A stretch of DNA of 64,000 bases from Mizuhopecten yessoensis (taxonomy: Eukaryota), in the NCBI RefSeq assembly GCF_002113885.1, contig NW_018406081.1:12247-76246 (forward strand), read 5' to 3'. Below are positions 1-57,433 of the stretch, piece after piece. Below the pieces are notes generated by a model. That model had not been told where the DNA came from and made no database searches. It saw only the letters and a program-made list of their open reading frames with translations. A program made the position numbers and the translations under genes. Every line of letters begins with the position of its first letter. The first letter of the stretch is position 1.

Positions 1-3000
1 AAGGACACCATGACATGGAATGGTACGAACAACAGAATGACACCGCAGAAAGGACACCATGGCCTGGAATGGTACGAACATCAGAATGTCACCGCAGAAA
101 GGACACCATGACATGGAATGGAACGAACAACAGAATGACACCGTAGGAAGGACACCATGACATGGCCTGGTACGAACATCATAATGACACCGCAGGAAGG
201 ACACCATGACATGGGAAGGTACGAACATCAGAATGTCACCGCAGAAAGGACACCATGACATGGAATGGTACGAACAACAGAATGACACCGTAGAAAGGAC
301 ACCATGACATGGCCTGGTAAGAACATCAGAATGACACCGCAGAAAGGACAACATGGCCTGGTACGAACATCAGAATGACACCGCAGGAAGGACACCATGA
401 CATGGAATGGTACGAACAACAGAATGACACCGCAGAAAGGACACCATGACATGGAATGGTACGAACAACAGAATGACCCCGTAGAAAGGACACCATGACA
501 TGGCCTGGTACGAACATCAGAATGACACCGCAGGAAGGACACCATGACATGGAATGGTACCTACAACAGAATGACACCGTAGGAAGGACACGATGACATG
601 GCCTGGTACGAACATCATAATGTCACCGCAGAAAGGACACCATGACATGGAATGGTACGAACAACAGAATGACACCGCAGGAAGGACACCATGACATGGA
701 ATGGTACGAACATCAGAATGACACCGCAGAAAGGACACCATGACATGGAATGGTACGAACAACAGAATGACACCGCAGAAAGGACACCATGACATGGAAT
801 GGTACGAACAACAGAATGACACCGCAGAAAGGACACCATGACATGGAATGGTACGAACAACAGAATGACACCGCAGAAAGGACACCATGACATGGAATGG
901 TACGAACAACAGAATGACACCGCAGAAAGGACACCATGACATGGAATGGTACGAACAACAGAATGACACCGCAGAAAGGACACCATGACATGGAATGGTA
1001 CGAACAACAGAATGACACCGCAGAAAGGACACCATGACATGGAATGGTACGAACAACAGAATGACACCGCAGAAAGGACACCATGACATGGAATGGTACG
1101 AACAACAGAATGACACCGCAGAAAGGACACCATGACATGGAATGGTACGAACAACAGAATGACACCGCAGAAAGGACACCATGACATGGAATGGTACGAA
1201 CAACAGAATGACACCGCAGAAAGGACACCATGGCATGGTATGGTACGAACATCAGAATGACACCGCAGAAAGGACACCATGACATGGAATGGTACGAACA
1301 ACAGAATGACACCGCAGAAAGGACACCATGACATGGAATGGTACGAACAACAGAATGACACCGCAGAAAGGACACCATGACATGGAATGGTACGAACAAC
1401 AGAATGACACCGCAGAAAGGACACCATGACATGGAATGGTACGAACAACAGAATGACACCGCAGAAAGGACACCATGACATGGAATGGTACGAACAACAG
1501 AATGACACCGCAGAAAGGACACCATGACATGGAATGGTACGAACAACAGAATGACACCGCAGAAAGGACACCATGACATGGAATGGTACGAACAACAGAA
1601 TGACACCGCAGAAAGGACACCATGACATGGAATGGTACGAACAACAGAATGACACCGCAGAAAGGACACCATGACATGGAATGGTACGAACAACAGAATG
1701 ACACCGCAGAAAGGACACCATGACATGGAATGGTACGAACAACAGAATGACACCGCAGAAAGGACACCATGACATGGAATGGTACGAACAACAGAATGAC
1801 ACCGCAGAAAGGACACCATGACATGGAATGGTACGAACAACAGAATGACACCGCAGAAAGGACACCATGACATGGAATGGTACGAACAACAGAATGACAC
1901 CGCAGAAAGGACACCATGACATGGAATGGTACGAACAACAGAATGACACCGCAGAAAGGACACCATGACATGGAATGGTACGAACAACAGAATGACACCG
2001 CAGAAAGGACACCATGACATGGAATGGTACGAACAACAGAATGACACCGCAGAAAGGACACCATGACATGGAATGGTACGAACAACAGAATGACACCGCA
2101 GAAAGGACACCATGACATGGAATGGTACGAACAACAGAATGACACCGCAGAAAGGACACCATGACATGGAATGGTACGAACAACAGAATGACACCGCAGA
2201 AAGGACACCATGACATGGAATGGTACGAACAACAGAATGACACCGCAGAAAGGACACCATGACATGGAATGGTACGAACAACAGAATGACACCGCAGAAA
2301 GGACACCATGACATGGAATGGTACGAACAACAGAATGACACCGCAGAAAGGACACCATGACATGGAATGGTACGAACAACAGAATGACACCGCAGAAAGG
2401 ACACCATGACATGGAATGGTACGAACAACAGAATGACACCGCAGAAAGGACACCATGACATGGAATGGTACGAACAACAGAATGACACCGCAGAAAGGAC
2501 ACCATGACATGGAATGGTACGAACAACAGAATGACACCGCAGGAAGGACACCATGACATGGCCTGGTACGAACATCATAATGACACCGCAGGAAGGACAC
2601 TATGGCATAGGATCGTACGAACATTAGAATGACACCGCAGAAAGGACACCTTGACATGGAATGGTACGAACATTANTGGCCTGGTACGAACATCATAATG
2701 ACACCGCAGGAAGGACACCATGGCATAGGATGGTACGAATATCACAATGACACCGCAGGAAGGACACCATGGCATGGGATCGTACAAACATCAGAATGAC
2801 ACCGCATAAAGGACACCATGACATGGGATGGTACGAACATTAGAATAACACCGCAGAAAGGACACCACGGCATGGGATGGTACGAACATCAGAATGACGC
2901 CTCAGAAAGGACACCACGGCATGGGATGGTACGAACATTAGAATGACACCGCAGAAAGGACACCATGACATGGGATTGTACGAACATCAGAATGACGCCT

Positions 3001-13951: not shown

Positions 13952-14217
13952 GGGTACGTAAGTATGGAAGCATTCCCATGCTCAGGCAATGCTTTGTTTG
14001 GAAGCCTTATGTCTTGTTCCGTTCATGAATTAATTATGGAATTATTTTGCCAATGATTTGGAAAAATATTTGAAGAGATGTCAAGCCGAATACTGTTTTC
14101 AATGTTTTACATTTTATTTTTCGATCGTTTGTCAAGATTTAAGTGAGATGAAAGAAAAGTTGTTTTGAGCACAGAATCCATACTTGAGCATGGGAACGGT
14201 TTAATGAATACGGGCCC
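13952..14217. mobile_element. MITE, PIF/Harbinger-like family (copy 1)
   Basis: Right TIR ..GAGCATGGGAACGGTTTAATGAATACGGGCCC with a decayed left TIR. The internal AAGCCGAATACTGTYTTCAATGTTTT is shared with 25036-25299. The superfamily is inferred only from the GGGCCCGTATTCA-type end. Confidence 0.7.
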
Positions 14218-14222
14218 AACTG

Positions 14223-14535
14223 CTACTTCATGAGCACTATTTCGACATTTTCTTCCGGTTGGTAAGTATCGATTATGAAAAGTTCTTTTTCATACAACCA
14301 ATACATTTTTTTTTGCATTGTACATACGCTTACAGCGTAACCAAAATCGACATCGATTTTGTGGACAACTCGTACACATGTTACACCTTTGTGTGCATAC
14401 GCTTCACTGGTCATTTGTCTGATGAAGGTGACAGTGTAGATATCGTACTAGTCATCGAAACGTCACATAGAAAATTGTATTGGTGGAGTAAAAAAATTCC
14501 TGAGCACTGTATATGGTAACACTGAAGCCGTCCAT
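14223..14535 (-). pseudogene. Decayed ~104-codon ORF antisense to the hammerhead, unknown product
   Basis: ATG at 14535. Removing one base from the A7 run at 14490-14496 joins it to ORF 14223-14414, giving MDGFSVTIYSAQEFFTPPIQFSM*RFDD*YDIYTVTFIRQMTSEAYAHKGVTCVRVVHKIDVDFGYAVSVCTMQKKMYWLYEKELFIIDTYQPEENVEIVLMK. TATATAAG lies upstream at 14608-14601. Confidence 0.35.
14414..14470 (+). ncRNA. Minimal type I hammerhead ribozyme (Penelope-like-element type)
   Basis: Core CTGATGA at 14419-14425, an extra A, stem II GGTGAC/GTCATC (14427-14432 and 14451-14456), GAAA at 14457-14460, then C-GTC (palindromic ACGT minimal stem III, predicted cleavage after 14464). Stem I (TGT/ACA) is short. Confidence 0.7.
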
Positions 14536-16530
14536 TCACATTAAGAACGAGGTGCATCAGCAGTGAATTCGGATCGACCACTCGTATCCGATACCTTGTA
14601 CTTATATAAATAGCGTTAACAATCGTCGTTACCGACGATTACCGATTTGTGATTATCAAAACGGTCAAGCTGAGAGCAATGTGATGAAGCACACCCGTGG
14701 AATGGCTACTAAGCGGCAGGAAACAGTGTTTAGGAATTATTCGTGCCTGAGGGACGCTCTGTCTACAGTTAGTGAAAATAATGGAGTTTCTGCTTGGAGA
14801 TCTTGCTAGTGCGTTTTGCAGTCGTAATAAAACCTGCAGAAACGGTGATAAAGTCAATATGCAAATAATACTGTAATGAGTTCTGATTTCGTGAATGTGA
14901 ACAACAATAAGGTAGTGTGAGATTTACGGTCTCGTTATGGTTATGTCAGTTCTGTTCCTCCACAAGCAAAACATAACAACACAATTCTTTATAAAATAAA
15001 TTCTTCGTTTTACAACGAAAATGCTAAACTTGCCAAAATTAGCCTATTTGTAGTACAAATCTCTAGCCTTTTCATAGGTAGTAAGTGTCATGAAGAATGG
15101 AATAATGAACGGATTATATATCCATTGAAAGCACAGATGTGAGAATCTAAAATGTTATTGAAAACTAAAACAAGAAAGTAATGAAGATTTTCTGTTGATA
15201 AAGTCATTAAATAATGAATTGATGACATTGTCGCTCCTATTCTTATCATTTTGTAATAGTTTGTTTTGTATCTTCATTAAGATTCATCAGTTTGCAACAT
15301 TTGATATCAAAATACTACTTCTTACACAAACAATGTACGTATTAAACGTGTCGCAACGGTTCAACACTGGTCCTACCTAATCACAGCTTGACAACGGGAC
15401 TAGTCGGTCTTGGAACGTTGCGACACGAACGTTGTTTGTGTTTTAAGTAAAACTTTGATAGACTTGTTTGTTTGAGTTTTGCTTCTCCACAACTGCTAAG
15501 GTCATATGAAGACGGATGCCCGGGGAGGCGCAATCGTGAGAAAAGATAACGTAAGAGAGAAAAGAAAAGACAGAACCAATGGAGCAGTAGGTCAATTTTG
15601 CTATCATCAAACTCCTCTTGGTAGATACACCGAAACAAACCCCTGATTCCGCAGAAACCCCCACATTAGTCAACTCGTCCGATATGAAGTGGGATAAAGG
15701 CAGGGCCCCTGATTCCCCTGAATCTGCACTTCGAAAAATGAAGGGGTCTAGTCTCAGTTCACACTATCAGAAATGCGTGTGTCTACACTTCGCATCCTTA
15801 CACGCCTGGCGTCTGAAGGACATAACTAGATTGCAAAATAAAATTGCTTGAGGGATGACGTTTCAAACGTGTATCACCTCTAGCTGCACTTGACGTATTT
15901 GGCACATGACGTAGACATCCCTTCCTACATATCCTCTTCAGACGATAGGTCAAAAGAACCAGTAGTACGTGCGTTGTCGTAGGATGTCACGAGCGACGAC
16001 ATGCCTAGCGTTGGCCTGCTGTAGCGTGATGCGACGTTGCTGTCTTAAAATAATGAGATGCAATATTGTCCCTATAGCGCACAAAGGTCAAGTTCCCATC
16101 AATAATCGCAAGAGTGGATCTTCTGTTAGCAGTTATTTCTCCCCGTACCTAAAATAACTTTCCCAATCCAGAGGAGCGGGGTTGGATTACACAAGAGACA
16201 TGTGGTATTTCTCCAGTACGGCAGTAGACCTTCACACGACCGTCAATGCTACCAAGATTATATCTTTATTTGTATGTAAACAGTACACTTGACAATTGCA
16301 CATGTTTGCACCGTAAGTACCGGTTACACACTTCTAATCTAAAAAGGTCGTATTGCTGGGAACTGCGACCGGTTACTGTGCTTACTCAAACGATTTTGCA
16401 CGGGCCTTACTGATTTGTCTGAACGGAACTATTGCGAGCAGTCAAAATTGACGTTTGGAAATGTGGTCGTCAAGTCTTGACATAACACGCGACAAGCCGG
16501 ATCTTGATCAGTCTCGGGTAGGAATCGAAT

Positions 16531-22194: not shown

Positions 22195-22425
22195 GGCCAG
22201 CAGTGGCCGAGTGGTAATTAAGGCGTCTGACCGTCTCTTCAAAATGTTTCCAAATCATTGACAAAGTAAACTTGAGTTATTAGGTTATAACAAGAACAAA
22301 AATTTAGGCTTGAGCACAAAATCCATGCTTGTGCATGGGTATAGTTTCATAAATACGTGCCCAGCCCTCCACCACTGGGTTGCGGGTTCGATTCCTACGT
22401 GGGACAGTCGCCGTATTTTGGCCAG
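22195..22425 (+). mobile_element. tRNA-derived SINE head interrupted by a MITE
   Basis: A-box TGGCCGAGTGG at 22204 and B-box GGGTTCGATTCC at ~22384. The body matches the SINE at 57256 (agccctc..ccactgggt.gcgggttcga..gtggg.cagtcgcc). Confidence 0.75.
22231..22362. mobile_element. MITE, PIF/Harbinger-like family (right half, nested in the SINE)
   Basis: TTGAGCACAAAATCCATGCTTGTGCATGGGTATAGTTTCATAAATACGTGCCC matches the right end of the copies at 14166-14217 and 25250-25299. Confidence 0.7.
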
Positions 22426-22434
22426 GCACTCCAG

Positions 22435-22895
22435 AAATCTTAGTAGGACTAAACTACTGTTGAAGTATCAGAGGAGGTGCATAAAAACCCTATGAATTTC
22501 AAAAATTTAAAGTAGTCCTGAGTAATTTATTATAGTTACGGCAAACCTCGGGTACTAAACACACACCATCAGAGTCTACCACCTTGTATCTTGAAAGGTG
22601 AAGGTATTACACACACAGGTGGTTGCACCTTCAAAATCTATTTATAGAAACAGTTTGCAAAAAAATGTAATTCTCTGCATCATACAGCTGTTTCGTCTTT
22701 CTTGGACTCCTCGTTGATGCTACGTGCCAAAAAGTTGGAAATCCGAATAGGTATAAAGTACTGTTGAAACAGAAGGAGGTATGCATAAAACACCTTAATT
22801 TATTAGTTTAAAAAATTACGAGCACTTAGTTAGTTTTCAATTAATAAACCGTGTATATTATGAACAATTCCACTTCTATTTAAAGGTTGGCAATA
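22435..22895 (-). mobile_element. Retrozyme-like tandem element (~1.4 units) with a decayed minimal hammerhead at 22677-22720
   Basis: Minus strand: GCATCA-ACGAGGA-GTCC AAGAA AGAC-GAAAC-AGCT-GTA-TGATGC. Stem I is a perfect 6 bp and stem III is the palindrome ACAGCTGT. The direct repeat TACTGTTGAA..GGAGGT..GCATAAAA occurs at 22455 and 22759 (period 304). The element is homologous to 29889-30280. Confidence 0.75.
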
Positions 22896-24410: not shown

Positions 24411-25035
24411 TTTTCCTAAAGGGGGAGGAACTTATATAAACACATGTTGATTGTTATCGGTTCTTAAAAGTGCAAGATGTGTTATGAGATGGTGAAGGAT
24501 CGTGGTTTTAAATAGATATTTTCTATTTGTGTCTTGCTCCTAGAAGGACGAATCGGCTTTTAGAAGCAGTGTTCGTTATTTTTGGCATACTGTATCTATC
24601 ACCAACTTTTAAATGTACAAATATGATTTTTTATGTTACCATCCATCTCTAAAACGTCCATTTGTTCACGCGCAATAGAGAAGGTTTGAACCTACTTACC
24701 GTATCTCTAAGACAGATCACCTGTACGTGACTTGATTGATTCTAAATTGATTCCGTGGACTTTTAATATTTGATCTGCTGCCTCCAGTGTAGCATTCTGG
24801 ATCAATCTTCTCCTGTCTCTTTTTAGTACCTTTTCATTTCTGCGGTGTTTTATAAGGCACGCCTGGTTAGACCGTCGTCTCAATTATATGGCCATGGAGG
24901 TAGTCGTTATTGCATTGCTTGAATGTCACATTTCAGTGTTGTTGCAATTTGAATTGTCCTTTTGATGTCCTCATGACCACCGGGAACTGCTCTTATACAC
25001 ATTAACTGTTGCAACTGTCCTTCCTTAAAACATCT

Positions 25036-25299
25036 GGGCCCTTATTCATGAAACTGTTCTCATGCTAAAGCATGGCTTGTGTGCACAATAATAATGCCTC
25101 GTATAAGTGATGAAATAATTCAATAGAAAATCTTATTTGTTCAATAACTTGGAAAAGAAAAGAAGTGATTTAAAGCCGAATACTGTCTTCAATGTTTTGA
25201 CTTTTTGATTGTGTTATATAGTTTTAGTGAGTTACAAGAAAGCTGGTTTGATCATTGCATCCATGCTTGAGAATGCTAACAGTTTCATTAATACGGGCC
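25036..25299. mobile_element. MITE, PIF/Harbinger-like family (best preserved copy)
   Basis: TIRs GGGCCCTTATTCATGAAACTGTTCTCATGCTAAAGCATGG and CCATGCTTGAGAATGCTAACAGTTTCATTAATACGGGCC. Confidence 0.8.
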
Positions 25300-28370: not shown

Positions 28371-29782
28371 AGCCTATTCAATGCAAGGCACCACATTAGT
28401 CTCCTCCTAAGATATACACTAAGATACAGCAGGCATATTCAATGCAAGGTACCACATTAGTCTCCTCCTAAGATATACACTAAGATACAGCAGGCCTATT
28501 CAATGCAGGCACCACATTAGTCTCCTCCTAAGATATACACTAAGATACAGCAGGCCTATTCCATGCAATGCGCCACATTAGTCTCCCCCTAAGATATATA
28601 TTAGGATACAGCAGGCCTATTCAATGCAAGGCGTCATATTAGTATCTTCTTAAGATATACACTAAGATACAGCAGGCCTATTCAATGCAAGGCGCCACAT
28701 TAGTCTCCTACTAAGATATACACTAGGAAACAGCAGGCCTATTCAATGCAAGACGCCACATTAGTCTCCTCCTAAGATATACACTAAGATACAGCAGGCC
28801 TATTCAATGCAAGGCGCCATATTAGTATCTTCTTAAGATATACACTAAGATCCAGCAGGCCTATTCCATGCAAGGCGACACATGAGTCTTCTCCTAAGAT
28901 ATACACTAGTATACAGCCGGCCTTTTAAATGCAGGGACCCAACATAAGTCTCCTACTAAGATATACACTAGGACACAGCAGGCCTATTCAATGCAAGGCA
29001 CCACATTAGTCTCTTCTTAAGATTATACTAGGATACAGCCGGCCTTTTAAATGCAGGGACCGAGCATAAGTCTCCTACTAAGATATACACTAGGAAACAG
29101 CAGGCCTATTCAATGCAAGACGCCACATTAGTCTCCTCCTAAGATATACACTAGGATACAGCAGGCCTATTCAATGCAAGGCACCACATTAGTCTCCTAA
29201 GATATACACTAATATACACTAGGACACAGCAGGCCTATTCAATGCAAGGCACCACATTAGTCTCTTCTTAAAGTATACAGCCGGCCTTTTAAATGCAGGG
29301 ACCCAACATAAGTCTCCTACTAAGATATACACTAGGACACAGCAGGCCTATTCAATGCAAGGCACCACATTAGTCTCTTCTTAAGATATACATTAGAATA
29401 CAGCAGGCCTATTCCATGCAAGGCACCACATTAGCCTCTTCTTAAGATTATACTAGGATACAGCCGGCCTTTTAAATGCAGGGACCGAACATAAGTCTCC
29501 TACTAAGATATACACTATGACACAGCAGGCCTATTACATGCAAGGCGACACATTAGTCTTCTCCTAAGATATACATTAGGATACAGCAGGCCTATTCAAT
29601 GCAAGGCGACACATTAGTCTCTTCTTAAGATATACACTAGGATACAACAAGCCTATTCAATGTAGGGGCCGAACATAAGTCTCCTCCTAAGATAAACACT
29701 AGGATACAACAAGCCTATTCTATGTAGGGGCCGAACATAAGTCTCCTCCTAAGATATACACTAGAATACAGCAGATATATTC
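28371..29782. repeat. 61-bp tandem satellite (~23 units) derived from a retroposon 5' leader
   Basis: Unit ATTCAATGCAAGGCACCACATTAGTCTCCTCCTAAGATATACACTAGGATACAGCAGGCCT with period 61 (28376 to 28437). A recurring variant unit occurs at ~28917, 29038, 29280 and 29463. Confidence 0.96.
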
Positions 29783-29888
29783 GTTCCATGAAGGTTTGCA
29801 GAATTAAAAAACTATTTTTATTATTTCTATTCTATGTATACTTTCTCTTACCATATACAAATGTACCCATATCCTGATGTTAATGCTT

Positions 29889-30280
29889 AAGGTACAATCA
29901 CCTGTGAATGTTACCTTCACATTTCAATATACAAGGTAGTAGACTCTGCTGGTGTGTATTTAGTCCCCGAGGATTGCCGTAGCCTTGATAGCCACAGTAA
30001 TCTCTTTTGAGTAGTGGCACGGTTCAAAATGCACATTTGATTTAAACTTAATCAGTACGTCTCTTAATTTTGAAATTCATGTTTCTACGCACCTTCTCTT
30101 TAATTTCAACAGAAGTGTAGACTTTTTTTTTTGCCCATGTATGCCACCTGCCGATGAGTACTTGAAGGATAAAACAGCTGTTTGATGCAGATAAGTTGAT
30201 GTTTGGCACACAGTATCTATTAATTAAATATAAGTAAAGTCACCTGTGTATATGTTACGTTCATCGTTGGAAACTACAGC
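29889..30280 (+). mobile_element. Retrozyme-like tandem element (~1.15 units of 342 bp) with a decayed minimal hammerhead at 30143-30188
   Basis: CCGATGA(30151)-GTAC TTGAA GGAT-AAAAC-AGCT-GTT-TGATGCAGA. CACCTGTG recurs at 29899 and 30241. The stretch 29889-29982 matches the reverse complement of 22536-22632. Confidence 0.7.
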
Positions 30281-57255: not shown

Positions 57256-57433
57256 CTAGCCCTCTTCCACTGGGTCGCGGGTTCGAGGCCTAAGTGGGGC
57301 AGTCGCCAGGTACTGACCGTCGGTTGGTGGGGGTTTTCCGGGAACTCCGGCTTTCCTCCATCACCAAAATCTGGCATGTCTTTAAATGGACCTTGCTGCT
57401 AATAGGACATAAAACACAAACAAACCAAACCAA
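57256..57433 (+). mobile_element. tRNA-derived V-type SINE (5'-truncated)
   Basis: B box GGGTTCGAGGCC, V-like core GGTTTTCCGGGAACTCCGGCTTTCCTCC, and tail GACCTTGCTGCTAATAGGACATAAAACACAAACAAACCAAACC. Confidence 0.85.

What the first reader, a model, noticed from the sequence alone, without database searches (positions are those of the whole stretch)
29889..30280. Retrozyme-like element, locus 2: a different circular permutation of the same unit
Seen: the same segments as locus 1 appear on the opposite strand but in the order B-A-hammerhead-B, with period 342. The two decayed hammerheads carry different lesions. Locus 1 has ACGAGGA with GAAA intact. Locus 2 has CCGATGA, with CGAAAC changed to TAAAAC, consistent with CpG decay. 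Together they point to an ancestor close to CTGATGAGTCC-n-GGACGAAACAGCTGTH-TGATGC, although neither copy retains the T of CTGA. Inference: two insertions, each slightly longer than one unit and starting at different points, fit reverse transcription around a circular RNA template.
Basis: partly seen in the sequence, partly recalled or inferred. Interest (0 to 1): 0.72.

Follow-up and report, generated by a model that had tools for sequence, protein, structure and literature searches.

The report
Decayed hammerhead retroposon copy, scallop-type genome
This is a dead copy of a 380-base non-coding jumping element that carries a hammerhead self-cutting RNA motif, a kind already known from mussels and other animals. 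Across the genome its copies all end at one fixed point and are cut short at the other end, so it was pasted in as a linear copy and is not a freely rotated circle.

Summary
Locus 2 (about 29862-30272, +) and locus 1 (22434-22885, -) share three segments in the stated orders, with internal periods of 342 and 304. Both carry a damaged type I hammerhead.

They belong to an old dispersed family. The unit is about 380 nt with 35% GC. A first look found at least 2,848 candidates, and copies are 70-87% identical to their consensus.

The hammerhead has the canonical metazoan architecture: helix I of 6 bp, helix II of 4 bp, and helix III of 2 bp with a palindromic AGCU loop.

- **Termini.** Of 67 genomic copies, 38 end 82-101 nt after the ribozyme cleavage site (p = 4e-31), while their 5' ends scatter round the whole unit. 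Lengths run from 0.38 to 2.9 units. This is a fixed 3' end with 5' truncation, not free permutation. Locus 2 is a typical 1.1-unit member.
- **Ancestral core.** The family core is CCGAUGA (U4C), not CUGAUGA.

The 3' end geometry matches the internal reverse-transcription start of an Anolis Penelope-like element, 85-92 nt after its hammerhead cut. A circular template is allowed but not required.

The scan holds other hammerhead/Penelope-like notes for this genome. Whether they concern the same family is unknown.

Verdict: a new member of a known kind (non-LTR retrozyme, or Penelope-type non-autonomous element). No RNA data could be obtained.

The parts
29862..30272 (+). Locus 2: one family copy of about 1.1 units. 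It runs from circular coordinate ~29-67, through the hammerhead, to the canonical 3' end at coordinate ~89.
   Evidence: Alignment to the family unit. The 5' edge is fuzzy (29862-29903). The 3' end lies at 30268-30272, where the family's usual terminal motif is followed by unrelated sequence.
30143..30188 (+). Decayed type I hammerhead of locus 2. Core CCGATGA lies at 30151-30157, C11.1/G12 are changed (TAAAAC, 30170-30175), and the former cleavage site lies between 30182 and 30183.
   Evidence: Sequence, alignment to the unit, no Rfam hit.
30232..30272 (+). Terminal redundancy (B'): a second copy of the start of segment B, giving the 342-nt period.
   Evidence: Self-BLAST of locus 2.
22434..22885 (-). 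Locus 1: a family copy covering coordinates ~132/175 through 380/0 to 148, then 225-325 after a 76-nt internal deletion. It lacks the canonical 3' end.
   Evidence: BLAST of the unit against the window, repeat families D6 and I1/I2.
22677..22720 (-). Hammerhead remnant of locus 1 (core ACGAGGA). Helix I (6 bp), helix II and helix III are still recognisable.
   Evidence: Rfam RF00163 full-length alignment, 22.3 bits against a threshold of 34, E = 0.009.
24538..24650 (+). Third, strongly 5'-truncated family copy (~0.3 unit). It begins inside the hammerhead at coordinate ~357 and ends at the canonical 3' end.
   Evidence: BLAST of the unit against the window, sequence.

Best explanation
Locus 2 is a dead, typical member of an old family of non-coding retroposons. 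The family has thousands of copies and a unit of about 380 nt that contains a canonical-architecture metazoan type I hammerhead. It is a non-LTR retrozyme, or a Penelope-type non-autonomous element.

**Shown**
- Copies share one 3' end inside the unit, about 88 nt downstream of the hammerhead cleavage site.
- Their 5' ends are truncated at all positions.
- Their lengths run continuously from 0.4 to 2.9 units as head-to-tail partial tandems.
- They have no poly(A), no special tail and no detectable target-site duplication.
- Every copy long enough to contain the ribozyme cleavage site carries it uncut.

**Inferred**
- A reverse transcriptase started cDNA synthesis at a defined internal site of a sense-strand RNA longer than one unit. 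That RNA was either an uncleaved multimeric transcript or a re-ligated circle.
- The enzyme fell off at variable distances, which produced the different 'permutations'.
- The most likely enzyme is that of a Penelope-like element. The genome holds many GIY-YIG endonuclease copies, and the Anolis element PAc starts reverse transcription internally 85-92 nt after its hammerhead cut.
- The source gene of most copies carried a U4C core (CCGAUGA). Ribozyme cleavage was therefore probably weak, or dispensable for mobilisation.
For: - **Size and age of the family.** A first look found 1,820-2,848 candidates. Copies are at most 85% identical to one another and 70-87% identical to the consensus.
- **Unit.** 380 nt, 35% GC.
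- **Termini.** 38 of 67 unique copies end at coordinates 82-101 (p = 4e-31). Their starts range from 10 to 376 and their lengths from 0.38 to 2.90 units. Fifteen are longer than one unit, and there is no step at 1.0.
- **Independent check.** The raw hit ends pile up at query positions 190-214, which is the same site.
- **Coverage.** It halves at coordinate ~90 and then climbs back along the unit.
- **Third window copy.** The 5'-truncated copy at 24538-24650 also has the canonical end.
- **3' flanks.** Heterogeneous, with no tail.
- **Hammerhead.** Rfam RF00163 gave full-length alignments on 12 family copies, 23.8-33.3 bits. The architecture matches the 'canonical metazoan' description in PMC4209133.
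- **Core census.** CCGATGA 123 against CTGATGA 33 exact matches. In BLAST-ascertained copies position 4 is C 39, T 5, A 2.
- **Penelope-like elements in the genome.** GIY-YIG gave 75 matches from 370 candidates.
- **Literature.** Internal RT initiation, and hammerhead cleavage not needed in vitro (PMC11167929). Penelope-type 5' truncation and partial tandems, including in non-autonomous derivatives (PMC8557442). Mussel retrozymes of 350-390 bp with about 5,000 hammerheads (PMC7229834). Animal retrozymes derived from Penelope terminal repeats (bioRxiv 10.64898/2026.07.22.740005).
Against: - No autonomous partner sharing sequence with the unit was identified. The window's own Penelope fragment shows no similarity to it.
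- No stable or covarying stem-loop was found at the 3' end site. The sequence there is GU-rich, not the AC-rich loop of PAc.
- No 30-40 nt Penelope 'tail' was seen.
- The match in distance (about 88 nt against 85-92 nt) is one comparison and could be coincidence.
- The sample is 67 copies, chosen by similarity or by an intact hammerhead.
- Local-alignment edges are uncertain by several nucleotides.
- A HERO-type LINE with a hammerhead-like spacer is reported for this genome in another unchecked note. It could be the partner instead.
Confidence: 0.75

Rival explanations
1. Circular monomer RNAs are reverse-transcribed by rolling circle from arbitrary start points, so genomic copies are free circular permutations slightly longer than one unit.
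For: Copies longer than one unit exist, up to 2.9 units, with no pile-up at any full length. Every copy carries the ligated or uncut cleavage junction. Mussel and other animal retrozymes accumulate as circular RNAs (PMC7229834).
Against: The 3' ends are not arbitrary: 38 of 67 fall within a 20-nt window (p = 4e-31). The family core is U4C, which lowers self-cleavage in vitro (PMC3088659), and cleavage is needed to make monomer circles. Only 1 of 67 copies keeps two recognisable hammerhead cores. A weaker form, a circle with a fixed internal initiation site, is not excluded and is folded into the best explanation.
Confidence: 0.1
2. The family is a non-autonomous element mobilised by a LINE, for example the HERO restriction-like-endonuclease LINE said to form partial tandems with a hammerhead-like spacer in this genome. 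It is not mobilised by a Penelope-like element.
For: A fixed 3' end with 5' truncation is the general signature of target-primed reverse transcription. An unchecked scan note (s1-528065) reports partial-tandem HERO copies with a hammerhead-like RNA in this genome.
Against: There is no poly(A) or microsatellite tail and no pol III head. Head-to-tail multi-unit copies and canonical type I hammerheads are documented for Penelope-type and retrozyme elements. The HERO sequence could not be fetched for comparison.
Confidence: 0.12
3. The loci are fragments of a hammerhead satellite DNA. They were spread and broken up by unequal crossing-over and segmental duplication, not by retroposition.
For: Hammerhead repeats were first described as satellite DNA (newt; cited in PMC7229834). 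A 61-nt satellite lies just upstream of locus 2.
Against: Copies are dispersed on hundreds of contigs as single pieces of 0.1-2.9 units. They share a common 3' boundary and have graded 5' truncation, which recombination does not produce. No long arrays appeared among the best-scoring hits to a 1.8-unit query. The neighbouring 61-nt satellite is unrelated in sequence.
Confidence: 0.03

Closest known systems
Metazoan non-LTR retrozymes (Cervera & de la Pena 2020, PMC7229834), especially the Mytilus galloprovincialis repeats of 350-390 bp
   Same: Both come from bivalves. The unit size matches (380 nt) and GC is low (35%). Both carry a type I hammerhead with a 6-bp helix I, a 4-bp helix II and a 2-bp helix III capped by a tetraloop. 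Both have thousands of copies in head-to-tail arrangements, with no LTR, PBS, PPT or ORF.
   Different: Most copies here are single, 5'-truncated pieces with a fixed 3' end, not dimers or multimers. The family consensus core is CCGAUGA (U4C). The family is old (13-30% from consensus). No circular RNA or any expression could be checked, and sequence relatedness to the mussel repeats was not tested.
Penelope-like elements and their non-autonomous derivatives (PMC8557442; PAc of Anolis, PMC11167929)
   Same: Both show high 5' truncation and partial tandems. The 3' boundary lies at an internal site of the repeated RNA, about 88 nt after the hammerhead cut here and 85-92 nt in PAc. Both have a hammerhead in the repeated terminal region. 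GIY-YIG endonuclease copies are abundant in the same genome.
   Different: There is no ORF. No sequence similarity to a known Penelope terminal repeat was shown. No 30-40 nt tail was seen, and there is no AC-rich stem-loop at the start site. The hammerhead is the full canonical type, not the 'minimal' Penelope variant.
Plant LTR retrozymes (PMC4918200)
   Same: Both are non-autonomous retroelements built round hammerhead ribozymes, and a circular RNA intermediate has been proposed for them.
   Different: The plant elements have type III hammerheads inside LTRs, a PBS, a PPT, 4-bp target duplications, GC above 55% and Gypsy-dependent mobilisation. None of this is seen here.
Natural U4C hammerhead core variant of a viroid (discussed in Perreault et al. 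2011, PMC3088659)
   Same: The same core substitution is involved. It is described as considerably lowering activity in vitro while remaining compatible with function in vivo.
   Different: That case is a replicating RNA pathogen. Here the variant is the consensus of a genomic repeat family, and its activity is unknown.

Membership tests
Hammerhead ribozyme type I (Rfam RF00163) | Three-helix junction with helix I open and helices II and III closed by loops | tested here: met
   The model aligns full length (positions 1-45) on locus 1 and on 12 other family copies. Helix I pairs GCAUCA with UGAUGC, helix II pairs GUCC with GGAC, and helix III is AC/GU with an AGCU loop.
Hammerhead ribozyme type I (Rfam RF00163) | Conserved core CUGANGA ... 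GAAA ... UH | tested here: not met
   The family consensus has C at position 4 (CCGAUGA): 123 exact matches against 33 for CUGAUGA, and C 39, T 5, A 2 in BLAST-ascertained copies. Locus 2 also has G12 changed to A and C11.1 changed to U. Locus 1 has C3 changed to A and U4 changed to C.
Hammerhead ribozyme type I (Rfam RF00163) | Score at or above the curated gathering threshold (34 bits) | tested here: not met
   The best family copy scores 33.3 bits and carries a CUGAUGA core. CCGAUGA copies score 23.8-27.9, locus 1 scores 22.3, and locus 2 gives no hit.
Hammerhead ribozyme type I (Rfam RF00163) | Self-cleavage at the H17 site | not testable with these tools
   This needs in vitro transcription, or RNA ends in vivo.
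Metazoan non-LTR retrozyme | Type I hammerhead inside a short (about 170-400 nt), low-GC, non-coding repeat unit without LTR, PBS or PPT | tested here: met
   The unit is 380 nt with 35% GC. There are no ORFs. Units are joined head to tail with no separate terminal repeats.
Metazoan non-LTR retrozyme | Occurs as tandem copies (dimers to multimers), so that two ribozymes flank a monomer | tested here: inconclusive
   15 of 38 canonical-end copies exceed one unit, up to 2.9 units. Only 1 of 67 copies keeps two recognisable cores, and most are sub-unit fragments. Both window loci have a single hammerhead.
Metazoan non-LTR retrozyme | [quoted passage not shown] | not testable with these tools
Penelope-type (PLE) mobilised element | Frequent 5' truncation with a defined 3' end, and partial-tandem (pseudo-LTR) insertions | tested here: met
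   38 of 67 copies end at one site, their 5' starts are scattered, and partial tandems reach 2.9 units. The definition comes from PMC8557442.
Penelope-type (PLE) mobilised element | Reverse transcription starts at an internal RNA site a fixed distance 3' of the hammerhead (85-92 nt in PAc) | tested here: inconclusive
   The 3' ends of copies lie 82-101 nt after the cleavage site and continue as an internal sequence in multi-unit copies. The geometry is the same as in PMC11167929, but this is an analogy from one element. No conserved stem-loop was found.
Penelope-type (PLE) mobilised element | Sequence similarity to the terminal repeat or 3' end of an autonomous PLE in the same genome | not tested
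The PLE fragment in the window shows no similarity.
tRNA-derived or LINE-dependent SINE | Pol III head (tRNA, 5S or 7SL) and a poly(A) or simple-repeat tail | tested here: not met
   There is no tRNA or other Rfam head in the unit. The 3' flanks are heterogeneous with no tail. The tRNA-like piece next to locus 1 is an unrelated repeat and is not associated with the family elsewhere.
Plant LTR retrozyme | Type III hammerheads in LTRs, a PBS, a PPT and 4-bp target duplications | tested here: not met
   The hammerhead is type I. There are no LTRs. No target duplication exceeds the control level.

The most novel reading that the evidence does not exclude
This family may be the first case where the genomic termini of a non-LTR retrozyme show how it moves. 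cDNA synthesis would begin at one internal site about 88 nt past the hammerhead cut, as in the Anolis Penelope element, on RNA longer than one unit. The burst of thousands of copies came from a source gene whose hammerhead carried the U4C core. Ribozyme cleavage, and therefore monomer circles, would then be dispensable for retrozyme spread, or U4C would be active in vivo in animals.
Probability: 0.3. Interest if true: 0.55.

Novelty: new member of a known kind. Interest (0 to 1): 0.33.

Why it matters
Locus 2 on its own is an ordinary fossil repeat.

The family is a little more useful. Animal retrozymes are thought to be mobilised by Penelope-like elements, but a 2026 preprint still calls the mechanism unknown. 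This family shows three things that bear on it:
- a fixed 3' junction at the same distance from the hammerhead as the biochemically mapped Penelope start site;
- graded 5' truncation;
- copy lengths that run smoothly past one unit.

This is the kind of genomic footprint that can link the two element types and can be checked in other genomes.

A family that multiplied with a U4C core also raises the question of whether self-cleavage is needed for spread at all.

Tried and rejected
- **RNA evidence.** Expression, circularity and cleavage in vivo are untested.
- **Autonomous partner.** I did not try other routes to the same letters. No RT ORF lies in the window. An all-against-all comparison of masked flanks gave no sequence consistently attached to the 5' side of copies.
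- **Target-site duplications.** None exceeded a shifted control.
- **Structure at the 3' end site.** RNAalifold on 13 internal occurrences gave about 0 kcal/mol and no covariation.
- **Single-sequence folding of the hammerheads.** Uninformative.
- **A distinct CUGAUGA subfamily.** No diagnostic sites were linked to it in 24 versus 15 copies. Rejected for now, though the counts at the two CpGs are oddly asymmetric.
- **Association with the tRNA-like repeat next to locus 1.** Not recurrent.
- **A secondary 3' end cluster at coordinates 38-50.** On inspection these were mostly alignment breaks caused by internal deletions.
- **Gathering-threshold Rfam scans.** No hit on the window or on 20 family loci.
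- **Use of the consensus.** A majority consensus of this non-coding repeat served only as a coordinate frame inside scripts. It is not reproduced here.

Full report
**Observation**

I read both loci and compared them.

Locus 1, taken as its reverse complement, matches locus 2 in three blocks. E-values are for a 128-kb search space.
- Segment B: 95 nt at 86%, E = 2e-26.
- Segment A: 80 nt at 75%, E = 5e-8.
- Hammerhead block: 74 nt at 74%, E = 2e-6.

The order is A-hammerhead-B-A in locus 1, with an internal repeat offset of 304. In locus 2 it is B-A-hammerhead-B', with an offset of 342.

- Locus 1 reads ACGAGGA, with GAAA intact.
- Locus 2 reads CCGATGA (30151-30157) and TAAAAC (30170-30175). 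It has also lost pairing in helix I and helix II.

Rfam's type I hammerhead model aligns end to end with locus 1 at 22677-22720(-), but below threshold: 22.3 bits against 34, E = 0.009. It finds nothing in locus 2. A gathering-threshold scan of the whole window is empty.

The one detail to correct is that CG to TA requires two substitutions, and only the first can be CpG deamination.

**What the loci belong to**

The window's genome is a 988-Mb eukaryotic assembly of 82,659 contigs. Another agent's unchecked note calls it a scallop (s1-510902).

Searching this genome with locus 1 gave 1,820 first-look candidates. A search with a 1.8-unit copy gave 2,848. Apart from a 99% haplotype duplicate of locus 1, hits are only 70-85% identical to the query. 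Copies are 70-87% identical to a majority consensus. This is an old, dispersed family.

Anchoring 42 copies on the hammerhead gave a unit of 380 nt with 35% GC. The region around the loci has no ORFs, and no tRNA-like head was found there.

From 312 exact matches to a 15-specified-base hammerhead word, and about 17% divergence per site, I estimate about 5,000 hammerhead-bearing copies. This estimate is an inference.

**The hammerhead**

The family motif has:
- helix I of 6 bp (GCAUCA/UGAUGC);
- helix II of 4 bp (GUCC/GGAC);
- GAAA;
- helix III of 2 bp closed by the palindromic loop AGCU;
- GUA at the cleavage site.

This is the 'canonical metazoan type I' architecture as described in PMC4209133.

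Rfam RF00163 aligns full length to 12 family copies at 23.8-33.3 bits, all just under the threshold of 34.

Position 4 of the family core is C, not U. The evidence is as follows.

| Source | Result |
|---|---|
| Exact pattern, CCGATGA form | 123 matches |
| Exact pattern, CTGATGA form | 33 matches |
| Exact pattern, CCAATGA form | 18 matches |
| First 100 of 312 matches to a pattern leaving positions 3-4 free | CC 59, CT 22, TC 6, GC 4, CG 3, CA 2, others 4 |
| 37 copies chosen by BLAST only, position 4 | C 39, T 5, A 2 |

The source of most copies therefore carried CCGAUGA (U4C). According to Perreault et al. 2011 (PMC3088659), U4C considerably lowers activity in vitro but was compatible with infectivity in a viroid.

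Are the 33 canonical CUGAUGA copies C-to-T decay products or a minor lineage? This is unresolved.
- No other site is linked to the difference in 24 versus 15 copies.
- The counts at the family's two CpGs are asymmetric. At the first CpG, TG is 33 and CA is 18. At the second, TG is 3 and CA is 20. I cannot explain this.

**Termini: the key test**

I rotated the unit so that coordinate 0 is the cleavage site. I then aligned each fetched locus locally to four concatenated units.

Among 67 unique copies:
- 38 end at coordinates 82-101. The expected number if ends were uniform is 3.5 (p = 4e-31).
- The 5' starts of those 38 run from 10 to 376, all round the circle.
- Their lengths run from 0.38 to 2.90 units, with no step at one unit.
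- 15 of the 38 exceed one unit.

Three further observations agree with this:
- Several apparent exceptions are copies with internal deletions that still end at the same motif.
- The raw hit table shows alignment ends crowding at query positions 190-214, the same site.
- Per-position coverage halves just after coordinate 90 and climbs back along the unit.

After the terminal motif the flanks are heterogeneous. There is no poly(A), no simple repeat and no family-specific tail. In multi-unit copies the same motif simply continues into the next unit.

No target-site duplications exceed a control.

**How the window copies fit**

- Locus 2 starts at coordinate ~29-67 and ends at ~89 (window 30268-30272). 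It is a typical 1.1-unit member.
It starts inside the hammerhead and ends at the canonical site.
- Locus 1 runs from ~132/175 through the junction to 148. It has a 76-nt deletion and then covers 225-325, where it stops abruptly against an unrelated tRNA-like repeat. It has lost, or never had, the canonical end.

**Mechanism**

A fixed 3' end with graded 5' truncation is the footprint of reverse transcription that starts at a defined point of the RNA and aborts at variable distances. The fixed end lies on the 3' side of the hammerhead-sense strand, so the template was the ribozyme-sense RNA.

The 3' end is an internal position of the unit, and copies pass smoothly through one, two and nearly three units. 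The template must therefore have been longer than a unit: a multimeric transcript or a circle.

Every copy long enough carries the cleavage site uncut. The template was thus either never cleaved or was re-ligated.

The published parallel is close. In the Anolis Penelope-like element PAc:
- Reverse transcription starts internally at 111-118 nt into the ORF.
- The hammerhead cut lies at +26, so the start is 85-92 nt past the cut.
- Unprocessed multi-copy RNA is the substrate.
- Hammerhead mutants insert normally in vitro (PMC11167929).

Penelope-like elements and their non-autonomous derivatives are known for 5' truncation and for partial or multi-copy head-to-tail insertions (PMC8557442). Animal retrozymes were recently argued to derive from Penelope terminal repeats (bioRxiv 10.64898/2026.07.22.740005).

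The genome holds many GIY-YIG endonuclease copies: 75 matches from 370 candidates.

I therefore favour Penelope-type target-primed reverse transcription with internal initiation. A circular template is compatible with this but not needed. The U4C core argues, if anything, for poorly cleaved multimers.

**What is not shown**

- I could not identify the autonomous partner.
- I found no conserved stem-loop at the start site and no Penelope 'tail'.
- An unchecked scan note reports a partial-tandem HERO LINE with a hammerhead-like spacer in this genome (s1-528065). It is an untested alternative partner.

**Comparison and novelty**

The closest known relatives are the non-LTR retrozymes of animals. 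The nearest are those of the mussel: about 5,000 type I hammerheads in 350-390 bp repeats, expressed as circular RNAs (PMC7229834).

This family shares unit size, composition, hammerhead architecture and head-to-tail arrangement. It differs in three ways:
- it is mostly single truncated pieces;
- it has a U4C consensus core;
- it is old.

Expression as circular RNA, a defining property, could not be tested.

No paper in the searchable library mentions hammerhead, retrozyme and scallop together.

I file this as a new member of a known kind. The locus itself is an ordinary fossil. The family-level footprint, and the fact that the family multiplied with a U4C core, are the modestly interesting parts.

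Noticed in passing
window 24538-24650 (+): A third copy of the same hammerhead family, about 0.3 unit long. It begins inside the ribozyme and ends at the family's canonical 3' end. With it, three family copies lie within 8 kb, although the genome-wide density is roughly one per 100-350 kb.
   Followed up: partly
window 28372-29774: A 61-nt satellite array of 23 copies at 82% match, ending about 90 nt upstream of locus 2. It is unrelated in sequence to the hammerhead family.
   Followed up: no
window 22286-22445 (+); also 57258-57307, 14165-14218, 25259-25299: A tRNA-derived, SINE-like repeat with a GGTTCGATTCC T-arm box and a weak Rfam tRNA-like alignment. It abuts the truncated end of locus 1. 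One piece lies right beside the Penelope fragment noted at 14223-14640. It is not recurrently linked to the hammerhead family.
   Followed up: partly
whole genome (pattern counts): The counts at the two CpGs of the family hammerhead are asymmetric. At C4-G5, TG is 33 and CA is 18. At C11.1-G12, TG is 3 and CA is 20. The intact form has 123 matches. Symmetric decay does not predict this.
   Followed up: partly
L012:1177-1328 (-): A long inverted-repeat hairpin scores 78 bits against Rfam MIR4371 (threshold 110). It is probably a MITE-like foldback next to a family copy.
   Followed up: no
window 615-2657 (-): Overlapping long ORFs (435-680 aa) in a GC- and A-rich, low-complexity stretch at the window's start, with only spurious Pfam hits. 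They are probably a simple-repeat artefact, not a gene.
   Followed up: no
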